This document shows, one piece after another, positions 1 through 57,763 of a stretch of DNA of 64,000 bases. The notes beneath the pieces are model-generated. The model was not told where the DNA came from, ran no database searches, and saw only the letters and a list, made by a program, of their open reading frames with translations. The translations under genes were made by a program, and so were the position numbers. This DNA comes from Phyllobates terribilis (lineage: Eukaryota), in contig NW_027362761.1 in the NCBI RefSeq assembly GCF_046119375.1, positions 499,472,001 to 499,536,000 of the forward strand. Reading direction: 5' to 3'. The first letter of the stretch is position 1; each line of letters opens with the position of its first letter.

Positions 1-891
1 TTTTTTTTTCTAATGTCACAGCCCTGCTCCACAGCTGAGTGAGGGGTGTTTGTTCCCTGTGCTGCTCTTCTGACATTGATTCATGTCTGGAGCTGTGTTT
101 CTTCTGTCTGCAGCGCATCCTTACATGTAACTAAGACTGGTTGCAATGAGAAATGTGACAAGGGCTGTACTGGTCAGTTTTATTTCTTTGGCATATCTAA
201 ATGATGTATCACCCCATGCAAAATAAGGAGAACTAAGTAGTCTGAAGGCTGCTATTAGTCATCACCTGATTGTTAATGGTAACTGTCCAGGACTGACACC
301 TAACCAAGACCATAGAACAGAACTGCTAAATATAAACCCCCTCTGACAGATACCAGATTAGAGAACAACCTGCTAAATAATAAAGATATCGAAGCCCAAA
401 TCAATACACAACAGGGACAAGGCCCCACTAATGCTGACCACCCAAAACTCTCAAAATACAGACCTATAAAAATGCATTTTGCAGAACCCCATAAAGCAAA
501 CTTTTCACTGCAGAACACCTTCAGAGGAAAACCCCCTTTGTGCACTCCCCCAAACACTTAATATAACTTACAAGGACTCCCACTTTATACACTTTGCAAA
601 TCCCCCCATTAATACTATCCCCCCACAGACTCCCGCTTTGTACACTCCCCAAGTCCTTTGCAGAACCCCCACACCTTATACACTATATAAACAGTGGTGC
701 TTTCACTGTACTACACATTGTCATTGTGTCACTAGGGGCCGTTCTCGTGACTTTGTCATATTTATGTGAAACCAGAAGTGTACATACTACAGGTGCATCT
801 CACTAAATTAGAATATCATCAAAAACTTAATTACTCTGTCGCCTCATTGGGGGACACAGGACCTTGGGTGTTATGCTGCTGTCCACTAGGA

Positions 892-1971
892 AGAATGAAC
901 AAATAAAGTAGCACACTGTAACACTGAGTATATAGATGTGAAATATGAATAGCATAACTGCTGTAAAAAATAGAAATAAATGAAAAATTTTTTGAAAATT
1001 TTTTTTAGCGCATGAAATATGAAGTATGGAAAATGAATAGCATTACTGCTGTAAATAAATGAGAAATCTTAGCGCATAAATTGGCCAATTCATGTGTACC
1101 TGACAGCCGCGGTAAGGCGTTTCTCGATGTCAGGACCTACCAATGTGAATACCTCTCTAAGAGACCTCCGTCTGCTTATGTGTGGGAAAGACAGATCCTG
1201 ATGCATTTAAAACCACCTGCGGCATGGGGGTGGGGGTGGAGTGCTCAGTCAACGCTAAATCTAGTAACAAAGAAAATGACGGCACTTCCACTACAAAAAC
1301 TAGGTGTGAACAGGTGCTTACTAAGAGCAGCTACCTCCATATATAATGAACAAATAAAGTAGCACACTGTAACACTGAGTATATAGATATGAAATATGAA
1401 TAGCATAACTGCTGTAAAAAATAGAAATAAATGAAAAATTTTTTGAAAATTTTTTTTAGCGCATGAAATATGAAGTATGGAAAATGAATAGCATTACTGC
1501 TGTAAATAAATGAGAAATCTTAGCGCATAAATTGGCCAATTCATGTTTTTAAATGCAGGCGGTTTTAAATGCATCAGGATCTGTCTTTCTCACACATAAG
1601 CAGACGGAGGTCTCTTAGAGAGGTATTCACATTGGTAGGTCCTGACATCGAGAAACGCCTTACCGCGGCTGTCAGGTACACATGAATTGGCCAATTTATG
1701 CGCTAAGATTTCTCATTTATTTACAGCAGTAATGCTATTCATTTTCCATACTTCATATTTCATGCGCTATAAATAAAAAAAAATTTTCAAAAAATTTTTC
1801 ATTTATTTCTATTTTTTACAGCAGTTATGCTATTCATATTTCACATCTATATACTCAGTGTTACAGTGTGCTACTTTATTTGTTCATTATATATGGAGGT
1901 AGCTGCTCTTAGTAAGCACCTGTTCACACCTAGTTTTTATAGTGGAAGTGCCGTCATTTTCTTTGTTACTA
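892..1971. repeat. Fold-back insertion of an unclassified ~451-bp repeat (S451), flanked by a 14-bp duplication GCTGTCCACTAGGA
   Basis: About 1.45 head-to-tail units (aatgaac at 894 and 1345, period 451), a short junction at ~1547-1560, then ~420 bp of the reverse complement. The duplicated target lies at 878-891 and 1972-1985. Confidence 0.9.
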
Positions 1972-3057
1972 GCTGTCCACTAGGAGGCGACACTAGGCTT
2001 AATCTGAAAAAGATTAATGGTGGCTCCTCCTCTGCAGTATACACCCCTGGACGGCGTCAGCCATCTTCAGTTTTTGCTTAGTGTCGCAATGAGGCACACC
2101 TAAAGATTTTTACCTCATTTTTTTCCGATTTTTTCTTTTTCCACGGAGTTACAGATGAAGATAAGTGGGTCTCCGGCGAGACTCCCGGCATGGCTCCTTC
2201 CTCTGCCTCCTTTTAGGGGTGCACAGTTGAAGTCGAGACGTCTCCTTACCATGTCGCTCCTTCCCCAACCCCTCAGGTGTTGGTTCGAAGTTGAGAACCC
2301 CCCTCCTTCCCCAATTCCTTTTGGTCTATGGGTTGAGGTCGAGGTGAGGGTGACAGCAGCACCCTCCCTAATCCCCCTCTGGGGGTATTAGGTTGAGACA
2401 CCACAGATAGGGCTTGTGCAGACAGCAATAACAGCTCCCAGTAGCTGTCGCTCTGCACCAACGTCCAGGAATCCCAGCTCTGCTGCAGACTCCTGCTGGG
2501 GCCGGGGGACAGTGCAGGCAGACAAGGCACACAGAGACACAGGCTATTTACAGCCCTGTTTCTCTGCTGGCACCAGCGCTATGGTGCCTCAGGGGGACCC
2601 TTTAAGGCCCCCTCTTAAGATAATATCCCCACCGCCTTCCCTGCCGTTAAAACCGGGGGGGGTCCGGTTCAGATCCGACAACCCCCCGGACTACCGCGCC
2701 GGCCTGGAGCCCTTTTGGGCATAGGTTCTAAATTTAGACCGTGGCTATACAGTGTCATAGAAGGGGCGGAGACGAACTGAAAGGGCGCACTTTCCAGCAT
2801 ACTGCCGCCCTTTTCAGCGCTCCGCCCACCTTCTTCTCCGCACTCCGGCGGCCATTAGCTACTGAAGGAGCGTTAACCCTTTAGCTACCGGTCGGCAGCT
2901 TGTCTCCGGGGGGCACAGGATCGTGGATTTAAACGGCGCTGGACTACAAGAGGCAGACTGGTGGGGTAAGATCACAGCTAGAGTCTCGCACTCTGCTGTG
3001 AATTCTATAAGCTTCTCTGCATTGCTGGCCCCCTCTGCATAGCCACCCCTGTATACT

Positions 3058-4344
3058 ATGCCGGGCTCAAAGTCCAAGAGAACCAGGCAGGATTGCTATT
3101 ATGCACTCTGTACTGCCTGCAGTAATACTCTCCCTAGTGGCAGCACGTATCCACATTGCCAGGACTGCATGCAGACTACTGCACCAGAGCCCCATGAAGC
3201 ACTTCCCAATACTTCGGTGCCTAATACCACACCGGAATGGGTCACTCAGATGTCGCAATCTATGACGCAGTCTATAGATAACCTCACATCCACATTGCTT
3301 CAGGCTCTGCAGACTCATGCTTCGGCTATGAACACTACTCAACAAAGAGAGAGTTCCACTCGGGGACATGATGGCACGGGCACATCCACGTCTAGATCAG
3401 GACGCAAGCGGACCCACAGGTCACGTTCATCTGCGTCATACCATACCACACGGTCGTCCCCTTCCAGTGAGAGACACCGTACTCCCAGCTCATCTAGACC
3501 GTCCCCTGACAGGGACAGACAACGCAGATCCCCACAGCCATCCCTGACCAGAGAAGGCCTCCGCTCCGGTTCTCCCAGCAGGAGACGCCTTGGTGATACA
3601 CAGGATTCGGAAGGGTCCCTGATCCCTATTCCCCCTGGCAATACAGTGCTAGTTGATGATTTAATTTCATCCATCCATCGGGTGCTGGACATCTCCGATC
3701 CACCCCTGGAGACACCAGGACATAAGATTTCCCTTGAAGGAGTCCTGAAACCGCCTAAGGTCTTCTTTGACCACCCAGAGTTTAATGCGATCCTTAAAAA
3801 GCAGTTCTCACAACCTGAGAAAAAGTTTACTAATCGCAAATATCTGGAGGCGCGGTACCCCTTTCCACAGGAGGTCACCAAACAGTGGACAGATCCACCT
3901 GAAGTGGATCCCCCAGTCTCCAGACTAGCAGCACAGACACTCCTTTCACTGCCAGATAGCTCAACCCTCAGGGACACAGCAGACCGGTAGGTGGAACGCA
4001 TGGCTCGTTCAATTTTCGAGGCCGCACGGGCCTCCCTGGCTCCCGCGTTCGCCTCAGTTTGGGCTGCCAAGGCAATCCTGGCCTGGGCCCAAAATTTACA
4101 AACTGGCCTACAAGCATCTACCCCTGAACTGTCGGACCAAGCGGCCCAAATAGCAGTTGTGGCAGATTGCATGTTCCATGCAGCTCTGGATTCTGCAAGG
4201 GGTGCAGCCGGGATAGCTTCAGACGCCATCACGATTCGGCGTATCCTCGCTGCGGGAATGGAAAGCAGATGCAGCTTCAAAGAAGTCCCTCACTCACCTC
4301 CCATACCTCTGGTCGGCTTTTCGGTGAACAGTTGGACACAATGA
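3058..4344 (+). pseudogene. DIRS ORF1 gag-like protein (N-terminal CxxC..CxxC, C-terminal LAP2alpha-like region), interrupted
   Basis: CTAC...CQDC at the N-terminus and PEVDPPVSRL...LRDTADR typical of vertebrate DIRS1 ORF1. An in-frame TAG at 3988-3990 is followed by homologous sequence (ERMARSIFEAA); the frame is lost near 4240. Confidence 0.8.
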
Positions 4345-4699
4345 TATCCAACGCCACCGGGGGTAAGAGTACCTCTCTCCCCCAACTGAAGCCCAAACAC
4401 ACTTACAAAAAGCGCAATCAAGTACGATACCGATCCTTTCGGAACTCTTCCGGCTAGTCCGTCTCGCGACCAGCACAGAATAACCACCGTGCTCCAAGCA
4501 GGGGCAACTCGAGGCCGACGCAAAAGTCAGACAAGACCGGGCAATCAAAGGCAGGCCAGTCAAAATTTAAAGGAGGAAAATCTCGCAATTCCTCCTCATC
4601 ATGGCTCGCGAACTCTGGAAGACACCCCACCTGTAGGCGGCCGTCTTTTGCTCTTTCACCAAGTCTGGCTGCCTATTACAGAGGACAGGTGGGTTAGGG

Positions 4700-6493
4700 A
4701 ACTAGTGTCTTCAGGATACAAGATAGAGTTCACTTCCAACCCGCCAAACAGATTTTTTTCTGTCTGTTCCCCCAAAACCGCCAGCCAAGGCTCGTGCCTT
4801 CCACCACGCGGTTTCCTCGCTTCTTCAACCAGGAGTCATAGTATCGGTCCCCACGGCCGAGCGCTTCCAAGGGTTCTACTCGAATCTATTCATAGTCCCC
4901 AAAAAAGAAGGCAGCGTACAGCCCATATTGGACCTAAAACGGCTCAACAAATATGTACGGGTACGTCATTTTCGCATGGAGTCCCTTCGGTCCATAATTG
5001 CGTCCATGGAGAAGGGAGAATTTCTCGCCTCCATAGACATTCAAGACACATACCTACATATACCAATTGCGCCAGCTTATCAGAGATTTCTCAGGTTCGC
5101 AATCGACCAGGAACACTACCAGTTCGTGGCTCTCCCGTTCGGACTCGCCACAGCTCCCAGAGTGTTTACCAAGGTCATGGCAGTCACCATGGACATCCTG
5201 CACTCCAGAGGCATAATAGTGGTTCCATATCTGGACGATCTCATCAAGGCTCCCACCTTCAAGGACTGCGGAATCAGCGTCTCAATCACAATCGACATTC
5301 TGAGTCGTTTGGGCTGGTTAGTCAACTTAAAAAAGTCATCACCAACCCCGAGTCAGTCTCTGACCTTCTTGGGAATGTTATTCAACACCCTCAAGAGTCT
5401 AGTACTCCTCCCCAAGGACAAAGCACTGCCTCTCCGTATAGGAGTCCGCACCCTACTTCGCAAACCCCCTCGGTCTCTCCGGTTTGCCATGAGAGTCCTT
5501 GGCAGGATGGTGGCGGCAATAGAAGCTGTCCCATTTGCCCAGCTTCACCTCAGACCTCTCCAACTAGCCATCCTCAAGTCATGGGACAGGAATCCTTTTT
5601 CTTTCGACAGGGAGTTTCAGTTGACGTCGTCAACCAGAAGATCCCTGCACTGATGGCTCAAGCCAACCTCACTAGAAAAGGGGAAATCCTTCCTCACGGG
5701 TCAATGGAAAGTTCTGACCACCGATGCGAGCCTGACGGGTTGGGGTGCGGTACACCTACACTACAGAGCACAGGGCAAGTGGTCCCCAACAGAAGCGACC
5801 ATGCCCATCAACATCTTGGAAATTCGTGCCATTCTCCTGGCGTTGAGAGCCTTCCATCACTTACTGACAGCCTCTCACATCAGAGTACAGTCAGACAATA
5901 CCACGGCTGTGGCATATGTAAATCACCAAGGGGGGACCCGCAGTGCCAGGCGATGCTAGAAGTGACACACATTCTCCACTGGGCGGAAGACACAGGTTCG
6001 GTTCTCTCTGCGGTCCACATTCCGGGTGTGGACAACTGGGAAACAGACTTCCTCAGCCGGCAGGGAATGGACTCGGGAGAGTGGTCCCTCCATCCCGAAG
6101 TTTTTCACCAGATCTGCCATCGCTGGGGGACTCCGGACTTGGACCTAATGGCATCCCACTTCAATGCCAAGGTCTCCAACTTCATGGCCAGAACACACGA
6201 CCCGCGGTCGCTGGGAGCAGACGCCCTGGTTCAGGACTGGACTCAGTTTCAGCTCCTGTACATCTTTCCACCTCTTCCCCTGATATCCAGAGTGGTGAGG
6301 AAGATCAAGCAAGAGGGAGTTCCAACCATCCTCATCGCACCAGACTGGCCCAGACGTACGTGGTACGCCGACATCGTTCAGCTTACAGCAGACGTCCCCT
6401 GGCGTCTCCCCAACCGCCGGGATCTTCTGTCACAGGGCCCGTTCTACCACCAGAACTCAGGGGCCCTCAATTTGACGGCGTGGTCATTGAGAC
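4700..6493 (+). pseudogene. DIRS RT, RNase H and N6-adenine methyltransferase-like domain (frameshifted)
   Basis: RT motifs DLKRLN, SIDIQDTYLH, LPFGLATAPRVFTK, YLDD. RNase H-like TTDASLTGWG at ~5716. MT-like DLMASHFNAK, LYIFPP and ILIAPDWPRRTWY in a different frame. Confidence 0.9.
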
Positions 6494-7161
6494 CTACAGA
6501 CGACCACTAGAGACGTGGGATCTCAACCTGGTGCTGACAGCGTTGCAGGAAACACCTTTTGAACCCCTTAGGGAAGTCTCACTCCACCTTCTATCCCAGA
6601 AAGTGGTTTTCCTAGTGGCAATCACCTCGCTACGCAGGGTGTATGAACTCACAGCACTCTCCTGCAGACAACCCTTCCTGGCTTTTTACCAAGACAAGGT
6701 AGTTCTCCGTACGGTTCCATCCTTCCTTCTGAAGGTTGTGTCCGACTTCCACCTCAATAAGGAAATTTCACTGCCATCCCTCTGTCCGGCCCCGGTTCAT
6801 AGAGTGGAAAAGGCTCTGCATACGCTTGACCTTGTCAGGGTATTACGTATCTATGTGTCTAGGACTGCGCCCTTCCGGAAGTCTGATTCTCTTTTCCTTC
6901 TTCTGGAAGGCGGCCGCAAGGGTCTACCAGCTTCCAAAGCTACCCTTGCTAGGTGGATCAAACCCACCATACAAGAGGCCTACCGCCTCAAAAAGGACCT
7001 CCTGGGCCATTCGGCTCCAGGCCTCGGCGCAACAAGTGTGTAAGGCAGCCACCTGGACTAGTCTACACACGTTTACCAAGCACTACAGGGTTCATACCCA
7101 ATCCTCGGCAGATGCGAGCCTGGGTAGACGTATCCTACAGGCGGCAGTGCCCCAATTATAG
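6494..7161 (+). pseudogene. DIRS tyrosine recombinase, truncated
   Basis: WDLNLVL, AITSLRRVYEL (catalytic R region), ARWIK and TFTKHY (catalytic Y) are present. The N-terminal core-binding part is missing at ~6493 and the HxxR motif is lost at a frameshifting deletion near 6995. Confidence 0.85.
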
Positions 7162-9579
7162 GGGCCTGTCTACACAATATTCATCCATTGCTTCCCACCC
7201 AGGGACTGCTTTGGGACGTCCTAAGGTCCTGTGTCCCCCCAATGAGGCGACAGAGTAAAGGAGATTTTTGTGTACTCACCGTAAAATCTTTCTCTTAGCC
7301 TCTAATTGGGGGACACAGCTCCCACCCTGTTGCCCGTCTCGGGCCGTTGTTACGTTGAGTTCTCATATTGGTGTTTTTTCTTGAGCTCGTACATAGTTGC
7401 CTTCTTATAGGCATGATTGTTATCCATGTTACGTTCCTCCTACTGTTTTTGCACAAAACTGAAGATGGCTGACGCCGTCCAGGGGTGTATACTGCAGAGG
7501 AGGAGCCACCATTAATCTTTCAGATTAAGCCTAGTGTCGCCTCCTAGTGGACAGCAGCATAACACCCAAGGTCCTGTGTCCCCCAATTAGAGGCTAAGAG
7601 AAAGAGATTTTACGGTGAGTACACAAAAATCTCCTTTTATTTTAGTTCTTCAATATAAAAAGTGAAACTCATATTATATAGTCATTACAAACAGAGTGAT
7701 CTCTTTCAAGTGTTTATTTCTGTTAATGTTGATGATTATGGCTTACAGCCAATAAAAACACAAAAGTCATTATCTCAGTATATTAAAATAATTAACAAAA
7801 AACACCTGCAAAGGCTTCCTAAGCGTTTAAATATGTCCCTTAGTCTATTTTAGTAGGCTCTGCAATCATGGGGAAGACTGCTGACTTGACAGATGTCCAG
7901 AAGGAAATCATTGGCACACTCCACAAGGTCTCAGAGTTTCAATTTTCATTTGGAAATCAAGGTCCCAGAGTCTGGAGGAAGAGTGGAGAGGCCACAATCC
8001 AAGCTGTTGAGGTCCAGTGTGAAGTTTCCACAATCAGTAATGGTTTGGGGAGCCATGTCATCTGCTGGTGTAGGTCCACTGTGTTTCATCAAGACCAAAG
8101 TCAGCGCAGCCGTCTACCAGGAAATTTTAGAGCACTTCATTCTTCCCTCTGCCGACAAGCTTTTTGGAGATGGAAATTTCATTCTCCAGCAGGACTTGGC
8201 ACCTGTCCACACTGCCAAAAGTACCAATACCTGGTTTATAAACAACAGTATCACTGTGCTGCATTGACCAGCAAACTCGCCTGACCTTAACCCCATAGAG
8301 ATTCTATGGGGTATTGTCAAGAGGAAGATGAGAGACACCAGACCCAACAATGCAGACGAGCTGAAGGCTGCTATCAAAGCAACCTGGGTTTCCATAACAC
8401 CTCAGCAATGCCACAGGTTGATCGCCTCCATGCCACGCCGCATTGGTGCAGTAATTGATGCAAAAGGAGCCCCGACCAAGTATTGAGTGCATTTACTGAA
8501 CATACATTTCTGTAGGCCAACATTTCGGATTTTAAAATCATTTTTCAAGCTGTTATAAAGTATTCTAATTTACTGAGATAATGACTTTTGTGTTTTCATT
8601 GGCTGTAAGCCATAATCATCAACATTAACAGAAATAAACACTTGAAATAGATCACTCTGTAATGACTCTATATAATATAGGAGTTTCACTTTTTGTATTG
8701 AAGAACTGAAATAAATTAACTTTTTGTTGATATTCTAATTTCGTGAGATGCACCTGTATATAAAAAGACACATATGCATGTTTTTCTCAATATCTGACAT
8801 GAAATCAGAATAGACCTTTCCCGTTTTTGGTCAAGTAGTATTACCATAATTTTCAATATTTGCCAAATGCCAGAATAATGACAGAGAGAGACAATGTTTT
8901 AAGGCATTTTTATTACTTACTGCAAAGTCAAAAGTTTACATACATTTCATTAGTATTTAGTACCATTGCCCTTAAACTGAATGACTTGGGTCAAACATTC
9001 GGGATATCCTTCCACAAGCTTCTCACAATAGTTGGTCAGAATTTGGGCCCATTCCTCCTGACAAAACTGGTGTAACTGATCCTGGTTTGTAGGTCGCCTT
9101 GCTCGCACCTGCCTTTTCAGCTTTGCCCATAAATTTTCAATAGGATTGAGATCAGGGCTTTGTGATGGCCACTCCAAAACATTGACTTTGTCATCCTTAA
9201 GCTACTTTGTTGCCATTTTGGCAGTATGCTTCGGGTCATTGTTCATTTGGAAGACCCATTTCCGCCCAAGCTTTAACTTCCTGGCTGATGTCTTGAGATG
9301 TTGCTTCAGTATTGCCAGATAGTCATCTTTTCTCATGATGCCATCTATTTTATGAAGTGCACCAGTCCCTCCTGCAGCAAAACAACCCCACAACATGATG
9401 CTGCCATCCCCGTGTTTTACAGTTGGGATGGCGTTCTTAGGCTTCCAAGCTTCTCCCTTTTTTCTCCAAACGTAGCGATGGTCATTATCCCAAAAAAGTT
9501 ACATTTTAGTTTCATCAGACCACAGGACATGTCTCCTAAAATTAAGTTTTTTGTTCCTGTGTGCATTTGCAGACATTAA

Positions 9580-19058: not shown

Positions 19059-20030
19059 TGTGACGATACAGCCTATAATCTTAATAAGCCAGACGTTTAG
19101 ATTTGTTAATCCAAGAGAAATACACTATTATCTTTGTGTTGACTTCTATTGCTCTGTGGAACAATGAATGTTTGCTAATTATGTTGATTAACCTTTGTGG
19201 ACCCTGTGACTTATTGACTCACAAGACAGGAGGACAAACTAAGCAAATTCATTAAATGCTTAAACAATGAGACATGAGGCTGCCCTTTCCCCCCCAACCT
19301 GTAGATGTATACTTAAAAAGGACATGTGCTTCTGTAGCAGGGGAGACTTGGAACAGAAATTAGAAAGAGACTTTACAGAGAGAGTCAAGGTTCAGACTCT
19401 GTCACACCATCAGCTTGGAAGCATAGCTTTACCTAAAGAGACACATATTTGGATTCTACATGATTCTAGTCTAAGGGTATATAGCCCTGACTGGAAAGAT
19501 GCTGATCTTCTCCATTGACCATCAGAGAGACCATGGATACATTTGGGGAGACCAGGTTGGGACGATGAAGTCACCTGGCCCCATGGATATGTTTGGGGTT
19601 GCCAGATGGGACCCTCCAGTCGTCTGGAACCCATGGAGACATTCGGAGAAGCTAGATTGAGACCAGCTGGTCATCTGTTACCATGGAAACTCTCGGAGAG
19701 GCCAGCGTGGGACCCTCTGGTCTCCTGGCCTAGTACATCGATGGACTGTCGGCTTCCTAAGCTTGCCGCTACCTTCTTTCTGTGGGGGCCCTCCAGAAGC
19801 AGGGGGCCACTGGTTGAGGTAGTTGGCCCTGGAAGTCCCAAAGTCGCAGCTGTTCTCGCCCGGGCAGAGCGGACGGGTGAGACTGTGTAATGTTGTACCA
19901 TCTTGGGTATTCGCTGTGACTGTTCTGTGTGTTTATTGGCCGCTTTATGGTTCAATAAAGTATTGCCATGCTGTTTTACCCTAACCCAGTGTTTGAGTAT
20001 GACACCCACGGAATACCCCGGGTCTTCACA
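19059..20030 (+). mobile_element. Solo LTR (972 bp) with 5-bp TSD GGATC
   Basis: ggatc|TGTGAC ... cttcaCA|ggatc, with an AATAAA at ~19954. It splits the LINE cleanly. Confidence 0.8.
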
Positions 20031-20325
20031 GGATCCCGGAAATATTGTTGAGTTGGAGTCAGCAGGAAGTGGAAAGGGCTTGGATATGTGGTTTGAAGAA
20101 GAGATTAGAGTCCACGGTTACCCCGAGGCAGCGAGCTTGCGGGACTGGGGAGAGTGAGCAGCCATTTACTTTAATGTATAGGTCTGTTGATTGAGATGAG
20201 GGAAAGATGATGAATTCTGTTTTGTCCATGTTAAGTTTTAGAAATCTAGCATAGAAGGGTGAGATAGCGGACAGACATTGTGGGATTTTGGTTAGTAAGG
20301 ACGTGATATCGGGTCCAGAGAGGTA

Positions 20326-21895
20326 CAGTGACAAGCAAAAGGGTAACAATGTTTTGAACTTTTGCCTTCTAATACTGCTTCGAATGTGAGACTTTCATCA
20401 TTTTATAGACAATCATCTTGGCTATCTCATACATAAATTTGACTTGCAACTATTTAGCATATGATTAATTTTGCAGATTTTTGTCATATCACTGCATTGT
20501 TACTGTTTAGATCCTAAAAATCAAAATTGTAATTTTAATTATTTTGCTAGTATTTTGTAAATCCACCTTTTGCTTTCAACACTGCCTGAATCCTTCTGGG
20601 CATGCTCTCGATCAGATTCAAGCATGTCTTGACCAAAATTTGATCCCAGGTCTCTTCTAGGCTTTTCCAAAGTTGGTGGATACTGGTCGACTCACTTAGG
20701 TATGTATACAGTTTTTTCTTCAACTTTACTCACAAGTGTTTATTTGGGTTGAAGTCTAGGGACTGTGGGGACCAATCCAGCACCTCTGCTTCATTATCAT
20801 TGAACCATTTCTTTGCCAATCTTGATGTATGCTTTGGGTCATTGTCCTGCTGGAACACTGTCATCCTTTTCATACCCATAGTACTCAAGTGTATGAAGTA
20901 ATTCGTCTTGTAGGATACTCGCCTATAGCTCAGCATTGAGATCATCATAAATCCTGGTCAAGTTTCCAACGCCTTTGGCTGTGAAACAACCCCATATCAT
21001 AAGGCATCCTTCACTAAACATGACAGTTCCTTCAAATTCGCAATTCGTTAGCCTCTTTTTCCCTTTTTTCTTCATTTGCACTCATCAGAGCTTAGCCCAT
21101 TGACTTTCGTCTCATCACTTAAAATCACTAGTTTCCAATCTTCAACTGTCCACTTTTCGTACTTTTTTGCAAACTTGAGCCGACGCTTCTTATGATGGTA
21201 TTGAAGTCGAGGCTTCTTCACCTTGTTTCAAGCCACTATTCCAGACTTGTGTAATGTGCATTGCATGGTGCTTGCTTGCACGTCTGTGGTCTCACTATAA
21301 GAAAGCATACGAGCCACTCCACTGCCACATTTGTCACGCCAGAATTGATAGATCTTGTGATGAACCAACTTGTTGACTTCAATATTTTGCCTGGACATCC
21401 ACCTCTTGGCTTTTGAATGGATGGACAGACTTCATTTTGTATTCTTCCAACTGTAATGGCACTCGCATAATGCAGTTTGTCAATTTTCTTGGCCGAGAGA
21501 CCGCTATTGATGAGCTGGATTATGCTGTTTCTCTTTTCTTAAGAAATCTTCTTCATGGCTACTTCTCTATTCGAACCAGTGACCTCTCACTTGGGAATCA
21601 ATCTAATAACACACTGAGCTATTAGGGAATGTGAGAACAGATTGTATTTTGTAGTATACAGAAAGAAAAATACTTTTCCACCACCAGGAGCAAAACAGTA
21701 ACAATGTAGTGACATGACAAGAATCCGCATAACTAATCATATGCAAAATATTTGCAAGTCAAATTTATGTATTAGATAGCCAATATGATAGTCTATAAAA
21801 TGATGGTAGTCTCATGTTTGAATCAGTCGTGGATTTTGAGATATGGAGCCTGAAGGTCAAAAGTTCAAAACATTGTTCCCTTTTGCTCGTTACTG
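20326..21895 (-). mobile_element. Tc1-like element (degenerate) inside the LINE
   Basis: TA|cagtgacaagcaaaagggtaacaatgttttgaacttttg versus caaaagttcaaaacattgttcccttttgctcgttactg|TA; QQDNDPKH on the minus strand. Confidence 0.85.
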
Positions 21896-24800
21896 TAGAT
21901 CTGTGTGTCATCAACATTAAGGTGATACTGAAATCTGTAGTAAAAGGGAATGGTTAACTGTGTCAAAAGCAGAGGACAGGTCCAGGAAGAGGAGGACAGA
22001 GTAGTGTTGCTTGGATTTGGCAGTTAGGTCATTGGTGAGTTTAGTCAGGGCAGTTTCAGTGGAGTGATGTGGTCGGAAGCCAGATTGTAAGCTGTCAAAG
22101 AGGAAGCAGCAGGAGAGGTGGGAGGACAGTTCAAGATGGAAGTGTTGTTCCAGTAGTTTTGAGGCGTAGGGGAGAAGTGATATGGGGCGATAGCTAGACA
22201 CAAAGGGTAAGTCAAGGGAGGGCTTTTTGAGGATTGATGTGATTGAGGCTTGTTTGAAGCATAAGAGAAAAACACCAGTTGTTAGTGACAGGTTGAAGAG
22301 ATGGGTTAAGTTTGGGATGAGATGGGATCGGGTCGAGTGCACATGTGGTGAGGATGTGATCTTGAGAGTAGAGAGGAAAGTTGATCTTCTGTAATGGTGG
22401 AGAAGCTGGTTTTTGAGGGGATGGGCTGAGTAGTTATGAGGAGGGACTGTGGGAGCTGTAGGCCAAAGCTTTCTCTGATGTTATCGATCTGCTTGAAGAA
22501 TGAGGCAAAGTCTTCAGCTGAGAGGAGAGCGAAGAGGTGCTGGGGAATGGAGGAGAGAATTGAAAAGGTTGAATAGCTGTTTAGGCTTGTGAGACAGGGA
22601 GAATATGAGAGATGAGAAGTAGGTTTGTTTTGCTACAGTGAGTGTGGACTTGAAAGTAGTGAGGGACTGTTTTAATGTTATGAAGTGCTCATTGGAATGG
22701 GATCTTTTCCATCTCCGCTCAATAACCCTGGAAGTCCGCCTCAGTTCTTTAGTCAGGCTGGTGTGCCAGGGTTGCCTGTTGATTTTGCGAGCTTTGGTAT
22801 GTGTGAGGGGGGCGACCGATTCGAGAGCTGCAGCTGTTGCAGTGTTATATAAAGCGGCAGCAGCATCTGCATTGTGTAAGGAACTTATGTTTGCCAGAGG
22901 GAGAAGGGATTCAGAGAGTGAGTGCAGATCAAGGTGTTTAAGATTTCTGTGAGGGTGTGCAACATTGTGGACCTGGAGAGGAGAGGGAAGAGAATGTAAG
23001 TAGGCTATGATCAGAAAGAGGGCGAGGTGAGCTAGAGAGGTTAGAAGGGGAACAGAGGCGGGTGAAGATGAGGTCCAGTATGTGGCCATCTTTGTGAGTG
23101 GCTGCGGGCGACCATTGAGCGAGGCCAAAGGACAAAGTGATAGAAGTTTAGAGACAGCTGAGTGGGAAGTGTCAATGGGGATGTTGAAGTCACCCATGAT
23201 GATAGTGGGGATGTCAGCGGAAAAGAAATGAAGTAGCCAGGTGGCAAAGTGGTCGAAGAAGGTGGTAGCTGGCCCTCGGGCGCGGTAAATGACAGCCAGT
23301 TGGAGAGGGGGTAGATGTGCACAGAGTGCACCTCAAAACAAGGGAGAGCACCAGAGAGTGGCAGTGGAACTTGGGTGAATAAAAGGATCAGCCATTTGAA
23401 AACCAACAAGCTGGATTCTTCTCTCCCCTATCATCTGTCGTGAAAGAGTCCAGAGTACACATTAGACTGCCAGCCGATCTAGCCGATATCTAGTCTAATG
23501 TGTATGGAGCCCGAACAGTCCACTGATCTTAATCTTACAGAGCATCTCTGAGACAAGATAGAACAGAATGTTTAGATCATATTAGTGCAGTCATCTTATT
23601 TGCGGCAACTACAAAAAGCCATCCTGTCCACATATACCGATATGTTGTGTAGAAAAATGTCAACACTTAAAAGGATATTCACATCTCCAACATCCTGTCC
23701 CAAAATGTAGTAGGTGTAAAAATAATAATATTAGCAATGTAGTATAATTCTTCTGATTAGCTATGTCGCTTACCCCTTGTGCACAACATTGCAGTAGCTT
23801 AGGTCTCCATGGTTATGACCACAATCAACTAACTATCACTATATGAGTGGTCGTAACCTTGGATACTGTAATGACCTGCACATGGGGTAAGCAACCTAGA
23901 AATGTAGTATAGTTCTAGTTCTTCTGATTAGCTATGTCGCTTATCCCATGTGCAGTGCATTGCAGTAGCTTAGGTATCAATGGTTACGACCACTCATATA
24001 GTTACAGTTAATTGTTAGTGGTCATCAAAACCATGGATACCTAAGCTACTGCAATGCCCTGCCCTTGGGATAAGCAACATAGCTAATTAAAAAAACTATA
24101 CTACATTTAAAATTGGAGGTGTTTGCTAATATTACTATTGTTACATCTAGAAAACCAAAGTAGACCAAGCCAAACCAAGTCGGCAAAAAAAGGGTATACA
24201 GTGTTAAGAGAACCAGACAGAGAAAAATATACCCAATAAAAATTAATTTTTAATTAATTATAATTACCATTAAAAGTGTCCTTAATAGTCCAAATGGGAC
24301 ACATCATAACTAAACATATCAGATAAAAACATATGGGGGAGAAATAAGGATGCCAGGATATACAGACAAGCTTGCCCTATATGGCCCTTATAAGGTAAAT
24401 ACCCTACCTAACAGCGGAGTGTTTTCACCCTAACGAACGGTTTGGTGTCCCCGCTCCACGAAGGCTGTCCCTTGTCTGACACTAAATCTCCCTAAACAGA
24501 CACACAATTTAAATTTCATAGGTATTGACCAAAATCAGTCATGCCATTATTAACATGCTAAATATTTATGTTAAATGGGGGAAGAAGTGAAAAAAACAGA
24601 GGGAAATATATCCCATAAATATTTATCAGTAGGATCATAGCCAGTCCTCCACCATTAGTGCACATAGGTGGGGGCCGTACAAACAAACACGAACACCCCC
24701 AAACGTTTAAACAGATATAGATTGGTTGGGACTATTTCTAATGGACACTTTTGCTTATGGGTCTACACCAGTGATTTTCAACCTTTTTTGAGCCGCGGCA

Positions 24801-29971: not shown

Positions 29972-31777
29972 TTGCAGCTTTTCCCGCCATCCATGGAGTT
30001 TCCCGCCACTGGGAGACGATTCCCGCCATTTCCAAAGATTTCCCGCCTTGGAAGAGCGGACGCCATTATGGGCGTGCCAGAGGGTGGCAAGAGGCCACCT
30101 CCCATCGTGGGCCAGGTCGAAGAATGGCGCCAAAAGCGGAAACCGCGCCCACCAACAGAGACTGTGATGCTGGAAGTGTCCATCAGCGTGAGAGAACTGC
30201 CCCTGGAACTGACAATCACAAAGTTGCCCCGGGACCACCTTCAATGTGGGCGGAGACAGAACAAGAGAGCAAAGATGGGTGTCGCCTGGAGGAGTCTGGA
30301 GAGAGCGCACCCGGAGACAAGAAGTCTGGAGAGGAGTCCAGAGAAAGCGTACCCGGAGATGGAGGGAGAGACAGGCAGCACCGACCCAGTGGTCAGGAGC
30401 CTGCTGCAAGCAACAACCCCACTAGGCTTAGTGGAGATCCTAGCACAGCTCCCCCGAGACCGGGAGTGTGCACAGACTGCGCTGGAGGGCCTCGCACGGA
30501 GGATGGCCCGGGTGCAGCGAGAGACGTTGGCGGAGTGGAGCCGAGAGATGGCCCAGCGGACCGAAACCCGTCAGCGGAGCACGCCACCCGAGACGAGGAG
30601 ACAGACCGCCTCTGAGGATGGTGCAGGAAGAGTGAAGGCCGGAGACGGCGCCGAGAAGGGAGCTGAACGGACGGAGGCAGGTAAAGGGGACGTCTCTACC
30701 CCGAGCCGGGAAACCGCGTGCCTGCCCCAGCTCCCCGTCGCAGAGCCCGAAATTCCCCCTGCCGTGCCCGTCGCTGCATCGTCACCGCCGCAGACTAGGC
30801 CTCAACCGGAAACCGCGGCCGCGACCCCTGTGACGTCACGCGCTTCGACCCTGAGCGCGGCAAAGCAGGAAATACCATCGGCCTGGTCGCAAGGCCTAGT
30901 ACACCCGGGCGCCGCCATTCCAACAGCGCCCCCTACCTCCGCGGAGCCACCAGCCTGGTCGCAGGGCCGAGTAACCACGGGCGCCGCCGTTCTTACGGTG
31001 CCCTTTTCCTTTAGCGTGCCCCAAGCCTGGTCGCAAGGCCTGGTCAACCCGGGCGCCGCTACCACCACAGCGCCCATAACACCTAAAGTACCGCACCTGG
31101 GTGAGGACCTGTTCGCCCAGCATACGTGCCCGGATGGGCAGCCCTTTGTGTGGCCACCGGAGTTTCACCATCCCCGACTCCGGAAAGAAAGACCCCTAGA
31201 TGAGCCCCTGATTCCGGTTCCGAAGCCCGTCAGGAGAACCCCGCTCCCGCTAGAAGAAGCACAATTCGAGTGGGACCCCACCGGAGGAGATCTCATGGGG
31301 TTCACTCAAGAAACGCGGGCAGCCGCAGCAGAGCGAGTGGAGTGCTGCCGCCAGCAGTTGGCAGACTTCGAGCGAGAACGGAAAGAGAGGCGGATCCGTG
31401 AGCAGCGGCTGCAGGAACGGAGCGCAGGGCAGAAGAGCCGGACCAGGAGGAGCCCCCGTGCGGCTCATGGTCCCCGTACCACCGGGACTGTGATTAAATT
31501 CAACCTGCAGCATGGGTGGGGCTTCATAAGAGACCATCATACCCCCGGCGACGTCTTTGTCACCCGCAGAGACGTAGAAAGCCATCTGCCGGAGGGACAC
31601 AGAGGTCGTGACCTGTATGTAGGGGACGAGGTCACCTTCGCCCGGCACAAGTGTGCCAAAGGACCCTACGCCCTCCATGTACATCGCCTGACGGAGGAGG
31701 AGCTGCGGTGTGAGGAGGAGCAGGAGGACCCGGACGGGTCTGAAGATAAAGAAGGAGCAGGAGGACGCCGTCGTTAA
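29972..31777 (+). CDS. Retroelement-borne protein (~600 aa): helical region, Pro/Ala/Thr-rich linker, coiled coil, C-terminal cold-shock domain, acidic tail
   Basis: The CSD at ~31484-31689 is GTVIKFNLQHGWGFIRDHHTPGDVFVTRRDV...LYVGDEVTF...GPYALHV, with RNP1-like GWGFI and RNP2-like DVFV. First ATG at ~29992. Three 24-aa AWSQG repeats (72-bp period at 30881, 30953, 31025). Confidence 0.8.
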   Translation: MQLFPPSMEFPATGRRFPPFPKISRLGRADAIMGVPEGGKRPPPIVGQVEEWRQKRKPRPPTETVMLEVSISVRELPLELTITKLPRDHLQCGRRQNKRAKMGVAWRSLERAHPETRSLERSPEKAYPEMEGETGSTDPVVRSLLQATTPLGLVEILAQLPRDRECAQTALEGLARRMARVQRETLAEWSREMAQRTETRQRSTPPETRRQTASEDGAGRVKAGDGAEKGAERTEAGKGDVSTPSRETACLPQLPVAEPEIPPAVPVAASSPPQTRPQPETAAATPVTSRASTLSAAKQEIPSAWSQGLVHPGAAIPTAPPTSAEPPAWSQGRVTTGAAVLTVPFSFSVPQAWSQGLVNPGAATTTAPITPKVPHLGEDLFAQHTCPDGQPFVWPPEFHHPRLRKERPLDEPLIPVPKPVRRTPLPLEEAQFEWDPTGGDLMGFTQETRAAAAERVECCRQQLADFERERKERRIREQRLQERSAGQKSRTRRSPRAAHGPRTTGTVIKFNLQHGWGFIRDHHTPGDVFVTRRDVESHLPEGHRGRDLYVGDEVTFARHKCAKGPYALHVHRLTEEELRCEEEQEDPDGSEDKEGAGGRRR

Positions 31778-42060: not shown

Positions 42061-42270
42061 GGGGTTTAATGACCATGATCAGTGCTAATAACGATTGTGA
42101 CGGTGCAGCAGAGTGTCAGCTATGATATTCAGCTGGAACCCTCTGATTATGGAGCTGACTCTGCTTGTGAGTTGGCACTACCATCTTGCAGTGTATGGCA
42201 GTTTGTCAGAAGTCGCCAACCGCTTTGCCATACATGTACAGCAGATATTGGGAAGGGGTTAAAGGGAATA

Positions 42271-42560
42271 CAGGTGCATCTCACTAAATTAGAATATCAT
42301 CAAAAGGTTAGTTTATTTCAGTTCTTCAATACAAAAAGTGAAACTCATATATAGAGTCATTACACACAGAGTGATCTATTTCAAGTGTTTATTTCTGTTA
42401 ATGTTGATGATTATGGCTTACAGCCAATGAAAACACAAAAGTCATTATCTCAGTAAATTAGAATACTTTATAACAACAGCTTGAAAAATGATTTTAAAAT
42501 CTGAAATATTGGCCTACTGAAATGTATGTTCAGTAAATGCACTCAATACTTGGTCAGGTC
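42271..42560. mobile_element. Tc1 TIR fragment (family of element B)
   Basis: TA|caggtgcatctcactaaattagaatatcatc...; no transposase. Confidence 0.8.
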
Positions 42561-52958: not shown

Positions 52959-53935
52959 TTAATAATTAAGATTTACCATATGTCTGCTTCATGTTATTGT
53001 TATTCTTTTGATTCTTTTAGCCTATTAGAAGGGTAATAAATTAAGCAGCAATTTCATTTTTACATTTTTAAGACATTTTCCAAAATCAATTTTTTGAAGG
53101 ACCTATGCAATTTTAACGCCATTATGTCCAATGACGGACATAGCCCATCTTGTGCAGGTGTCAGTTTCCGCACCATGACGGTCTTTCCTAGTCATGACTT
53201 TGAATTGTCACTGTGTGTAAACACACAGTGACAGTTCAGTGCTGACAGCTGTCAGTGACACCTGCAAGGCATGGGATGAGGTGCGGGAATCCATGCCATC
53301 GGTCCCCGCACCCAGATCGCTGTTTTCGGTCAGTCATTCTGACTGACCGGCAGGAGTGGGCTGGGCCAGGGGGGCACAGGGGCTACAGGGGGCAAATGCC
53401 CCCTGGGCCGGTCCCCTAGCGGCTGTTTCGGGCCGCTCTGCTAGAAAGCAGGTGCTGGCTCTGTACATTTAAATATGTACAAGTCCCGGCAGCCGCTTTC
53501 TAGCCCCGTAGACACACCTACACTGTGTGCAGTGAGTCTGCTCAACTCGCATCATCTAGGGCACAGGGCTGCTTCTGGTAGGAGAGCAGTTTGTAAGCAC
53601 AGTATCAGGTCAGCTGGGGCGAGGCAGGAGATCTTTGATGTTTTTAGGAGGAGGTGAAAGGACAAGGCTCGCCTCAGGCTCTTGGTATGTTCATGGCCAG
53701 ATCATGCGTCTGTCTGCAGTCCTGCTGTCTGATTTATTGCAGTAGACTGACCCATCACACAAGTCGGGTCGTGCTGTCAGTGGGGTCATCGGCTCCAGCT
53801 TTACCTGATCTGTATGGAAGGTCAGTCTGCAGTAATAACTCAGTGAGGGTCAGATAAAGCGACTGCAGACAGGAGTATACAGCACCCTGAACTGACTGAT
53901 CCTGAGCCTACAGGACACCATATAGTATATATGTA

Positions 53936-57713
<3,778 letters not shown>

Positions 57714-57717
57714 TATG

Positions 57718-57763
<46 letters not shown>

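What the first reader, a model, noticed from the sequence alone, without database searches (positions are those of the whole stretch)
892..1971. Unclassified 451-bp multimeric repeat inserted as a 5-prime-inverted fold-back with a 14-bp target duplication
Seen: inside the DIRS left terminal repeat sit 1.45 head-to-tail units, a junction with a short templated duplicate (ttttaaatgc-aggcgg-ttttaaatgc), then ~0.93 unit in the opposite orientation, all between two copies of GCTGTCCACTAGGA. There are no TIRs, poly(A) or coding capacity. Established: long variable TSDs with inverted 5-prime segments are typical of target-primed reverse transcription (L1 twin priming, Penelope-like elements), and tandem monomers are typical of retrozyme-like RNAs. 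Inference: S451 is a non-autonomous retro-mobilised multimeric RNA rather than a static satellite.
Basis: partly seen in the sequence, partly recalled or inferred. Interest (0 to 1): 0.7.

Follow-up and report, generated by a model that had tools for sequence, protein, structure and literature searches.

The report
Mobile 451-bp repeat inserted as fold-back
A very abundant, non-coding 451-base repeat of a frog-like genome was pasted into another transposon as two head-to-head pieces inside a 14-base target duplication, most likely by reverse transcription of a repeat RNA that also carries a predicted, untested hepatitis-delta-type self-cutting fold.

Summary
Positions 892-1971 hold 1.45 head-to-tail units of a 451-bp repeat (S451), an 8-nt templated filler and 0.93 unit in inverse orientation. 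The block lies between two copies of GCTGTCCACTAGGA, inside the left inverted terminal repeat of a DIRS-like element. The other terminal repeat (7529-7567) keeps the exact empty site.

New evidence:
- A second S451 insertion lies in a Tc1 element (54683-56523). It has a target duplication of about 337-341 bp and ends within 4 nt of the same S451 position (unit 368-372).
- Both arms of locus 1 are sub-segments of the locus-2 insert, including the same G-then-A difference between successive units. The template was therefore a discrete molecule of non-identical units, not a monomer circle.
- The geometry fits twin-primed reverse transcription of minus-strand S451 RNA.
- That same strand carries a 74-nt hepatitis-delta-like double-pseudoknot fold (1134 to 1061). 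One of 1500 shuffles did as well. It is non-canonical (C at +1), Rfam does not detect it, and cleavage is untested.
- There is no hammerhead and no Penelope gene nearby, and I found no evidence of expression.

Earlier notes of this scan describe similar 421-, 429- and 459-bp repeats on other DNA of this genome.

Verdict: a real, recent mobile insertion, probably RNA-mediated. It is a new variant of the retrozyme / non-LTR kind.

The parts
878..891 (.). Left copy of the 14-bp target-site duplication GCTGTCCACTAGGA
   Evidence: D16; single copy at the empty site
892..893 (+). Two bases (AG) between the duplication and the repeat that neither side templates
   Evidence: compared by eye with the unit junction at 1340-1345
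894..1546 (+). Left arm: S451(+) unit positions 1-451 (G at unit position 45, window 938), then 1-202 (A at position 45, window 1389). In the model this is cDNA primed from the top-strand nick, antisense to the RNA
   Evidence: (D1)
1547..1554 (+). 8-nt filler ttttaaat that repeats 1563-1570, with 2 nt (gc, 1555-1556) shared with the right arm: a templated insertion at the joint between the arms
1555..1971 (-). Right arm: S451 in inverse orientation. The + strand reads S451(-) unit 327->1 then 451->368, and ends ...ctttgttacta(g) against the right duplication. In the model this is the 3' part of the RNA copied from the bottom-strand nick
   Evidence: (I1, I2)
1972..1985 (.). Right copy of the 14-bp duplication. 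Its first G could equally belong to S451
1061..1134 (-). Candidate HDV-like ribozyme, complete copy, in the first unit of the left arm. Helices: P1 CCUGACA/UGUCAGG, P2 GAGAAA/UUUCUC, P3 GCC/GGC, P4 CAUGAAUU-GGCC-AAUUUAUG. L3 is UUACCGC; P1.1 is UA with UA; J4/2 is CG-CUAAGA. The predicted cut lies between window 1135 (U-1) and 1134 (C+1)
   Evidence: not found by Rfam
1641..1714 (+). The same candidate ribozyme, complete copy, in the right arm
1512..1546 (-). 3' part only (P2', J4/2, P4) of a third ribozyme copy. The left arm stops here, 39 nt short of the predicted cut
831..2074 (+). Left inverted terminal repeat of the DIRS-like host element (831-891 plus 1986-2074), split by the insertion
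7455..7603 (-). Right inverted terminal repeat of the same element. It holds the exact empty site at 7529-7567
54683..55434 (-). Second locus, copy a: S451(+) unit 369->451, 1->451 (G at 45), 1->218 (A at 45) on the minus strand, inside a Tc1-like element
55772..56523 (-). Second locus, copy b. It has the same extent as copy a, and the whole 1089-bp period differs from copy a at a single base (55013)
54343..56860 (-). Three copies of one Tc1 segment of about 337-341 bp (54343-54683, 55432-55772, 56521-56860) alternating with the two S451 inserts. This reads as a long target duplication followed by a tandem duplication of the 1089-bp period
   Evidence: (D2, D5)

Best explanation
S451 is a non-coding, non-autonomous mobile repeat. 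The block at 892-1971 is one recent insertion, made by target-primed reverse transcription with twin priming.

The template was a linear RNA of the S451 minus strand, at least about 1.7 units long, with non-identical units. Its 3' end, or its obligatory start site for reverse transcription, lies at unit position about 368 (...UUGUUACUAG).

Proposed steps:
1. A bottom-strand nick primed cDNA from that end and gave the right arm.
2. A second nick 14 bp away on the top strand primed inside the RNA and gave the inverted left arm.
3. The two cDNA ends were joined by microhomology-mediated joining, with an 8-nt templated filler.
4. Filling the 14-nt stagger gave the duplication.

Each unit of the same RNA strand carries a candidate HDV-like self-cleaving fold. 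I propose that it sets the 5' end of the RNA, as in R2, RTE and L1Tc elements, and that it halts the reverse transcriptase. Two of the three cDNA stop points lie 23 and 39 nt inside it.

Shown: the insertion, the duplication, the empty site, the shared end, the shared unit order, and the fold on the predicted strand. Inferred: the RNA intermediate, the enzyme, the cleavage, and the role of the fold.
For: - Exact empty site and 14-bp duplication. The empty joint is also present in contigs of three runs.
- A second insertion in a Tc1 element also has a target duplication. Its S451 boundary is at unit 369-373, against 368-369 at locus 1. Two independent boundaries within about 5 nt on a 451-nt circle have a chance of roughly 1-3%.
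- With that shared end taken as the priming end, all three segments fit one RNA strand, S451(-). The left arm then needs only internal priming. This is the published architecture of twin priming (PMC2837659, abstract).
- Left arm, right arm and the locus-2 insert share the order 'A-unit, G-unit, 84-nt tail' at unit position 45. The template was therefore a defined multimer.
- The fold: only the S451 copies reach 24 helix pairs with my HDV-type descriptor in 128 kb of window. Among 1500 dinucleotide shuffles of the unit (both strands), 1 reached 24 pairs and 43 gave any hit.
- Features of solved HDV ribozymes that the fold also has: U at -1; L3 with U at its first and G at its sixth position (the U20/G25 pair, PMC13635239); a two-pair P1.1 taken from L3 positions 2-3; a C-containing J4/2. 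U:A pairs in P1.1 occur in fast cellular HDV ribozymes (PMC13635239). U-1 is the preferred base (PMC1874588, abstract).
- The inner ends at unit 218 (locus 2) and 202 (left arm) both fall within 40 nt 3' of the predicted cut at 241/242. The chance of that is about (40/451)^2, or under 1%.
- S451 is non-coding, about 36% GC and very abundant: summed contig depth is about 1e5 against 6-9 for the unique flank. That matches the published description of animal non-LTR retrozymes as low-GC tandem repeats whose duplications exceed 4 bp (PMC7229834).
Against: - There is no direct sign of RNA. All holders look like DNA, and the run guessed to be RNA shows the same S451:DIRS ratio as the DNA runs.
- There is no poly(A) or other recognisable 3' signal, and no partner reverse transcriptase. 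The only RT in the window is an unrelated, broken APE-type LINE at about 19.5-23.4 kb, with no similarity to S451.
- The insert ends do not coincide with the predicted cleavage site.
- The templates must have escaped cleavage at one or two internal ribozyme copies.
- The fold has C+1 paired to G in place of the G1.U37 wobble that binds the catalytic metal.
- Rfam's HDV-family models give nothing, even on 136 nt at E<=10.
- Nested-fold energies are ordinary (z -0.1 to -0.9).
- All copies are nearly identical, so no covariation can be scored.
- The descriptor was written after I had seen the candidate.
- Only two insertions could be examined.
- A duplication of about 340 bp and the tripled structure at locus 2 are unusual for simple target-primed reverse transcription.
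Confidence: 0.55

Rival explanations
1. DNA-level templated insertion. A broken or stalled replication end switched template into S451 satellite DNA or a linear extrachromosomal piece of it (MMBIR/FoSTeS, or polymerase-theta end joining). It copied 0.4-0.75 kb once or twice and returned, which duplicated 14 bp or about 340 bp of the target.
For: The junctions carry 0-3 nt of microhomology and an 8-nt templated filler, which is typical of theta-mediated joining. Locus 2 looks like a tandem duplication with an insert at the joint, later repeated. Many other head-to-head S451 joints exist genome-wide, and some are themselves amplified: the +208|-272 joint has depth 1072 and 3657 against 6-9 for unique sequence. 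No RNA evidence was found.
Against: Random template switching does not predict the same S451 end point at two loci, the same unit order in all three segments, or a clean 14-bp stagger. The end-joining features are equally expected when two cDNA ends are resolved in twin priming.
Confidence: 0.22
2. The classical retrozyme route. A self-cleaved, ligated monomeric S451 RNA circle was copied round and round by a reverse transcriptase primed from both cut DNA ends.
For: The inserts are multimeric with circularly permuted ends. This is the published model for animal retrozymes (PMC7229834; bioRxiv 10.64898/2026.07.22.740005).
Against: Successive units differ (G then A at unit position 45), and they do so in the same order at both loci. 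A monomer circle cannot give that. The shared start point at unit 368 is not expected on a circle. The circular fold is not rod-like (z about -1, 56% paired). A dimeric circle is not excluded.
Confidence: 0.1
3. Assembly or chimeric-read artefact. The fold-back, and the tripled structure at locus 2, were made by the assembler in a highly repeated sequence.
For: S451 is present in about 1e4 unit equivalents. No listed contig bridges 1546/1555. The periods at locus 2 are almost identical.
Against: A fold-back chimera gives arms that mirror each other at the joint. Here the arms meet at unit 202 and unit 327 with a templated filler, and the whole block sits precisely within a 14-bp duplication of a site that is intact in the paralogous repeat.
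Confidence: 0.05

Closest known systems
Animal non-LTR retrozymes (tandem repeats with type I hammerhead ribozymes; Cervera and de la Pena 2020, PMC7229834; Li, Clavereau and Pollet 2026 preprint)
   Same: Non-coding tandem units of a few hundred nt, low GC and high copy number. They occur as dispersed multimers with target duplications longer than 4 bp. A self-cleaving motif is predicted in every unit. They occur in amphibians.
   Different: No hammerhead on either strand; the candidate motif is HDV-like. The unit is not a highly paired rod. The inserts come from a template with non-identical units and a fixed end, not from a monomer circle. No link to Penelope pLTRs could be tested.
L1 twin priming (5'-inverted L1 insertions; PMC2837659)
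   Same: A target duplication flanks a 3' segment in sense orientation and an inverted upstream segment. The inner joint shows microhomology or filler. The duplication is in the 7-20-bp range.
   Different: No poly(A), and no T-rich nick site (the inferred first nicks are ...CAGC/AGCA and ...ATAG/AACA). The template is a tandem repeat. The two arms overlap in template coordinates and do not lie side by side on it.
HDV-like ribozymes at the 5' ends of non-LTR retrotransposons and their non-autonomous derivatives (R2, RTE, Baggins, L1Tc/NARTc; review PMC6765202)
   Same: A double-pseudoknot fold on the element's RNA strand is proposed to release the 5' end from a longer transcript. The carrier is a retroelement without a promoter of its own.
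   Different: Here the fold recurs in every unit of a tandem repeat. Insert 5' ends lie 23-39 nt inside it, not at the cut. +1 is C. Cleavage is untested.
Penelope-like elements
   Different: The window has no reverse transcriptase or GIY-YIG ORF of that type, and S451 has no minimal hammerhead.

Membership tests
Animal non-LTR retrozyme | Type I hammerhead ribozyme in every tandem unit | tested here: not met
   Rfam cmscan at E<=10 on 600-2300 and on 1030-1165, both strands, gave no hammerhead. The only CUGAUG string is followed by C, not A.
Animal non-LTR retrozyme | Non-coding tandem units of low GC, dispersed with target duplications longer than 4 bp | tested here: met
   451-bp unit of about 36% GC, longest ORF 93 aa, 14-bp duplication with an exact empty site.
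Animal non-LTR retrozyme | Abundant circular monomer RNA with a highly self-paired fold | tested here: inconclusive
   The predicted circular fold is ordinary (z -0.9 to -1.3). No usable RNA run was available. The unit heterogeneity within the inserts argues against a monomer circle as template.
HDV-like ribozyme | Nested double pseudoknot P1-P1.1-P4 / P2-P3 in the canonical order, with the cut immediately 5' of P1 | tested here: met
   Descriptor search: P1 7 bp, P2 6 bp, P3 3 bp, P1.1 2 bp, P4 8 bp within 74 nt. This is the best hit in 128 kb. 1 of 1500 shuffles equals it.
HDV-like ribozyme | Catalytic cytosine in J4/2 and the U...G pair in L3 | tested here: met
   J4/2 is CGCUAAGA and L3 is UUACCGC, with U at position 1 and G at position 6. 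The roles of these bases are taken from PMC13635239. Presence of the bases does not show function.
HDV-like ribozyme | G1.U37 wobble at the cleavage site | tested here: not met
   +1 is C, paired with G. The importance of the wobble comes from the literature cited in PMC13635239 (its ref. 28) and from my own knowledge.
HDV-like ribozyme | Self-cleavage, and covariation that supports the helices | not testable with these tools
   All copies in the window and the public contigs are nearly identical in the 74 nt. There is one variable site, in unpaired L3, at window 1663 = 1112. No bench assay was possible.
Insertion by target-primed reverse transcription with twin priming | Target duplication, sense 3' segment, inverted upstream segment, one consistent template strand | tested here: met
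Insertion by target-primed reverse transcription with twin priming | RNA intermediate and a reverse transcriptase/endonuclease partner | tested here: inconclusive
   No RNA evidence. There is no partner in the window and no 3'-tail similarity to the one LINE fragment.
Penelope-like element or derivative | RT plus GIY-YIG ORF, or pLTR homology | tested here: not met
   No GIY-YIG, and no second RT among 43 window ORFs scanned against Pfam: 33 of at least 95 aa through alignment A1 and 9 of at least 150 aa singly. pLTR homology could not be tested because no repeat library was available.

The most novel reading that the evidence does not exclude
S451 belongs to a set of frog 'delta-type retrozymes'. 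These would be non-coding tandem retroelements whose minus-strand RNA is cut by an HDV-like ribozyme, not a hammerhead. They would be pasted in as direct or head-to-head multimers by twin-primed reverse transcription from a fixed 3' start site. No paper I could find describes a ribozyme/carrier combination of this kind.
Probability: 0.35. Interest if true: 0.8.

Novelty: new variant of a known kind. Interest (0 to 1): 0.6.

Why it matters
If the fold cleaves, retrozyme-like spreading of satellite-type repeats would not be tied to the hammerhead or to Penelope elements. A second ribozyme class would have been recruited for the same life style in a vertebrate. The locus also gives a clean, datable example of a 'satellite' moving to new sites: exact empty site, two events, one template. 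That bears on how satellites seed new arrays. The prediction can be tested directly with one in-vitro cleavage assay and one genome-wide boundary table.

Tried and rejected
- Hammerhead, twister, pistol, hatchet and other known ribozymes or ncRNAs: Rfam gave nothing above noise. The weak SNORD29, dCoV and snoRNA rows are chance.
- tRNA-like 3' processing signal at the shared end: ARAGORN found none.
- A special hairpin at the shared end (unit 368): the predicted hairpin puts the site in a loop, but its energy is ordinary (z -0.87).
- Rod-like circle: rejected.
- Helitron-like reading (the minus strand ends in CTAG): rejected, because there is a clean duplication, no A/T insertion site and no 3' hairpin.
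- Snap-back second-strand synthesis: rejected, because the arms do not mirror each other at the joint (unit 202 against unit 327).
- Partner element: the APE-type LINE fragment at 19.5-23.4 kb shares nothing with S451, and low-stringency BLAST of the S451 tail against the masked window gave only 11-mers.
The scan's sequence index was blank.
- Expression: the run guessed to be RNA (X12) behaves like DNA.
- Depth along the unit did not show the 2:1:2 pattern expected if all copies were one discrete 776-nt element (my reading). Arrays or related families must therefore also exist.

Full report
**1.

Reading 1-3600 and the repeat finder show a 451-bp unit at 894-1344. It is repeated head-to-tail for another 202 nt (1345-1546; 201 of 202 identical). 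The same sequence follows in inverse orientation at 1555-1971; the arms 999-1220/1555-1776 and 1261-1457/1776-1972 are 98-99% complementary.

Between the arms lies ttttaaatgc-aggcgg-ttttaaatgc. Of this, 1547-1554 belongs to neither arm and repeats 1563-1570.

GCTGTCCACTAGGA stands at 878-891 and at 1972-1985. Tandem Repeats Finder lists nothing because there are fewer than two full copies.

The block has no long ORF, no tRNA, no terminal poly(A), and about 36% GC.

**2. It is an insertion, and the empty site survives**

A probe made of the two flanks with one copy of the 14-mer matches 39/39 at 7529-7567 on the minus strand, with none in 100 shuffles.

With the insert removed, 831-891 plus 1986-2074 align at 95% with 7603-7455 in inverse orientation. 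A short internal copy lies at 7220-7258. The ORF between them has a Dam-type methyltransferase domain.

This fits a DIRS-like element, 831-7603, whose left inverted terminal repeat was hit. Contigs of three public runs, one from a second organism label, also carry the joint 877->1972 with 14 shared letters. That is the uninterrupted repeat.

**3. A second, independent insertion**

BLAST of the unit against the window finds S451 again at 54683-56523, on the minus strand, inside a Tc1-like transposon. That transposon has terminal repeats at 53926-54073 and 57576-57723 and transposase motifs.

There, a 752-nt piece (unit 369->451, 1->451, 1->218) occurs twice. It alternates with three copies of one Tc1 segment of 337-341 bp. 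The uncertainty is 1 and 3 nt of microhomology at the joints. The two 1089-bp periods differ at a single base.

I read this as one insertion with an unusually long target duplication, followed by a tandem duplication through the duplicated flanks. An assembly error in the copy number cannot be excluded.

**4. What the two loci share**

- The S451 boundary next to one duplication is ...TAGTAACAAAG at locus 1 and ...TAG(C)AACAAAG at locus 2. In unit coordinates these are 368-369 and 369-373.
- Unit position 45 is G in the unit nearest that boundary and A in the next unit. This holds in the locus-2 insert and in the left arm of locus 1. The right arm has G.

Both arms of locus 1 are therefore sub-segments of the locus-2 insert. 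The two loci differ consistently at unit position 106, so they are not copies of each other.

The template was thus a discrete molecule with non-identical units and a fixed end. This argues against a monomeric RNA circle copied round and round, and against random capture of satellite DNA.

**5. Geometry**

Take the shared boundary as the point where DNA synthesis started on the target's 3'-OH. All segments then fit one template strand, the minus strand of S451 as I oriented it.

- At locus 2, the insert reads 5'-218->1, 451->1, 451->369-3'.
- At locus 1, the right arm reads 327->1, 451->368, up to the right duplication.
- The left arm is the complement, started inside the template at unit 1 and extended to unit 202.

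This is the architecture described for twin priming (PMC2837659). The inner joint shows 2 nt of microhomology and an 8-nt copy of nearby sequence, as expected when two cDNA ends are joined.

Simple snap-back is excluded, because the arms meet at different unit positions.

**6. A ribozyme-like fold on that strand**

Earlier notes of this scan report HDV-like folds in 421-, 429- and 459-bp repeats of the same genome. Prompted by them, I looked for such a fold and found one on the minus strand at 1134->1061 (74 nt).

| Element | Sequence |
|---|---|
| P1 | CCUGACA / UGUCAGG |
| P2 | GAGAAA / UUUCUC |
| P3 | GCC / GGC |
| L3 | UUACCGC |
| P1.1 | UA with UA (L3 positions 2-3) |
| P4 | CAUGAAUU-GGCC-AAUUUAUG |
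| J4/2 | CG-CUAAGA |
| -1 | U |

The statistics of my own descriptor for this topology were:
- It hits the unit once.
- In the whole window, both strands, it gives 15 places. Only the four complete S451 copies reach 24 helix pairs. The others are AT-rich or microsatellite hits with long loops.
- Of 1500 dinucleotide shuffles of the unit, 43 gave any hit, 3 reached 22 pairs and 1 reached 24.

The U/G pair of L3, the cytosine in J4/2 and U:A pairs in P1.1 agree with solved HDV-family ribozymes (PMC13635239). U-1 is the preferred base (PMC1874588).

Against it:
- +1 is C paired to G, not the G.U wobble.
- Rfam's HDV models see nothing.
- Nested energies are ordinary.
- No covariation can be scored, because the copies are nearly identical. 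Public contigs show one variable site in the 74 nt, in unpaired L3.
- I wrote the descriptor after I had seen the candidate.

I rate it a credible candidate, at about 35-40%.

**7. Relation of the fold to the insert ends**

The ends do not lie at the predicted cut (unit 242|241). Two of the three points where synthesis stopped do lie just inside the fold: unit 218 is at the P3/P1 strands, and unit 202 is at the start of P4. These are 23 and 39 nt from the cut.

This is what would be seen if the RNA began at the cut of the 'A' unit and the enzyme halted at the folded core. The full RNA would then be 241 + 451 + 84 = 776 nt. This is inference from two events.

It also requires that the internal ribozyme copy stayed uncut. 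A slow, non-canonical ribozyme would allow that.

**8. Abundance and spread**

Summed contig depth over S451 is about 1e5 in two DNA runs, against 5.8 and 9.2 on the unique flank at 600-770. This suggests roughly 1e4 unit equivalents, but the tool warns that depth is not a copy number.

A second organism label holds a 348-nt contig with one difference. G- and A-type units are of similar abundance.

Many other head-to-head S451 joints exist, and some are themselves amplified. An example is +208|-272, seen from both strands in two runs at depths 1072 and 3657. Fold-back joints are therefore a recurrent outcome for this repeat.

The run guessed to be RNA gives the same S451:DIRS ratio as the DNA runs, so nothing can be said about expression.

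**9. Surroundings**

No Penelope-type gene is near. Pfam scans of 43 window ORFs (33 of at least 95 aa through alignment A1, 9 of at least 150 aa singly) gave one RVT_1 hit, at 21917-22342 on the minus strand. It belongs to a broken APE-type LINE that shares nothing with S451.

**10. Literature**

Animal retrozymes are described only with hammerheads, as low-GC tandem repeats with duplications above 4 bp (PMC7229834, PMC7761336). A 2026 preprint derives them from Penelope pLTRs (10.64898/2026.07.22.740005).

HDV-like ribozymes are known at the 5' ends of R2, RTE, Baggins and L1Tc, and of some non-autonomous elements (PMC6765202). Full-text searches for a tandem, retrozyme-like carrier of an HDV-like ribozyme found none. 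The library is incomplete.

**11. Limits**

- Only two insertions could be studied.
- No repeat library or eukaryotic genome search was available.
- The organism is coded. 'Frog' comes from earlier notes of this scan, not from my own test.

**12. Verdict**

This is a real, recent, mobile insertion of an abundant repeat. It is probably RNA-mediated (about 0.55), with a DNA-level template-switch origin as the main rival (about 0.22).

Noticed in passing
window 54343-56860: A Tc1-like transposon carries three identical copies of one of its own segments (about 340 bp), alternating with two identical 752-nt S451 inserts (period 1089 bp, one difference). This looks like a very long target duplication that was later duplicated in tandem.
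   Followed up: partly
window 788-832 (also 8714-8758 minus, 42269-42313 plus): A 45-nt piece just left of the DIRS-like element is by far the most abundant sequence in the public runs: summed depth is about 9e5-1.8e6 against 6-9 for unique DNA. Hundreds of contigs diverge at 788 and 832. It is probably the end of a very high-copy small transposon.
   Followed up: no
genome-wide, seen through window 1101-1673: Specific head-to-head S451 joints are themselves present at roughly 100-400 times single-copy depth in two independent runs. Examples are unit +208 joined to -272, and +270 joined to -290 with 2 extra bases. Palindromic S451 junctions have therefore been amplified.
   Followed up: no
window 831-7603: The DIRS-like host element has 150-bp inverted terminal repeats (95%), a short internal copy of the repeat end at 7220-7258, and an ORF with a Dam-type methyltransferase domain. 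Pfam RVT_1 did not detect its reverse transcriptase.
   Followed up: partly
window about 19500-23400, minus strand: A broken APE-endonuclease plus reverse-transcriptase LINE (motifs [23 protein letters not shown]) is cut short by a Tc1-type insertion.
   Followed up: partly
window 29972-31777: An ORF of 601 aa has a cold-shock domain at its C-terminal end (Pfam CSD, E 3.6e-8). It lies inside the stretch another note of this scan calls an LTR element with a cold-shock cargo.
   Followed up: no
window 894-1060 within each unit: The AT-rich half of S451 contains an internal direct sub-repeat of about 40 nt (unit 46-84 and 134-174, 88% alike). Public contigs show a deletion variant that joins the two (joint 1424->1053).
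   Followed up: no
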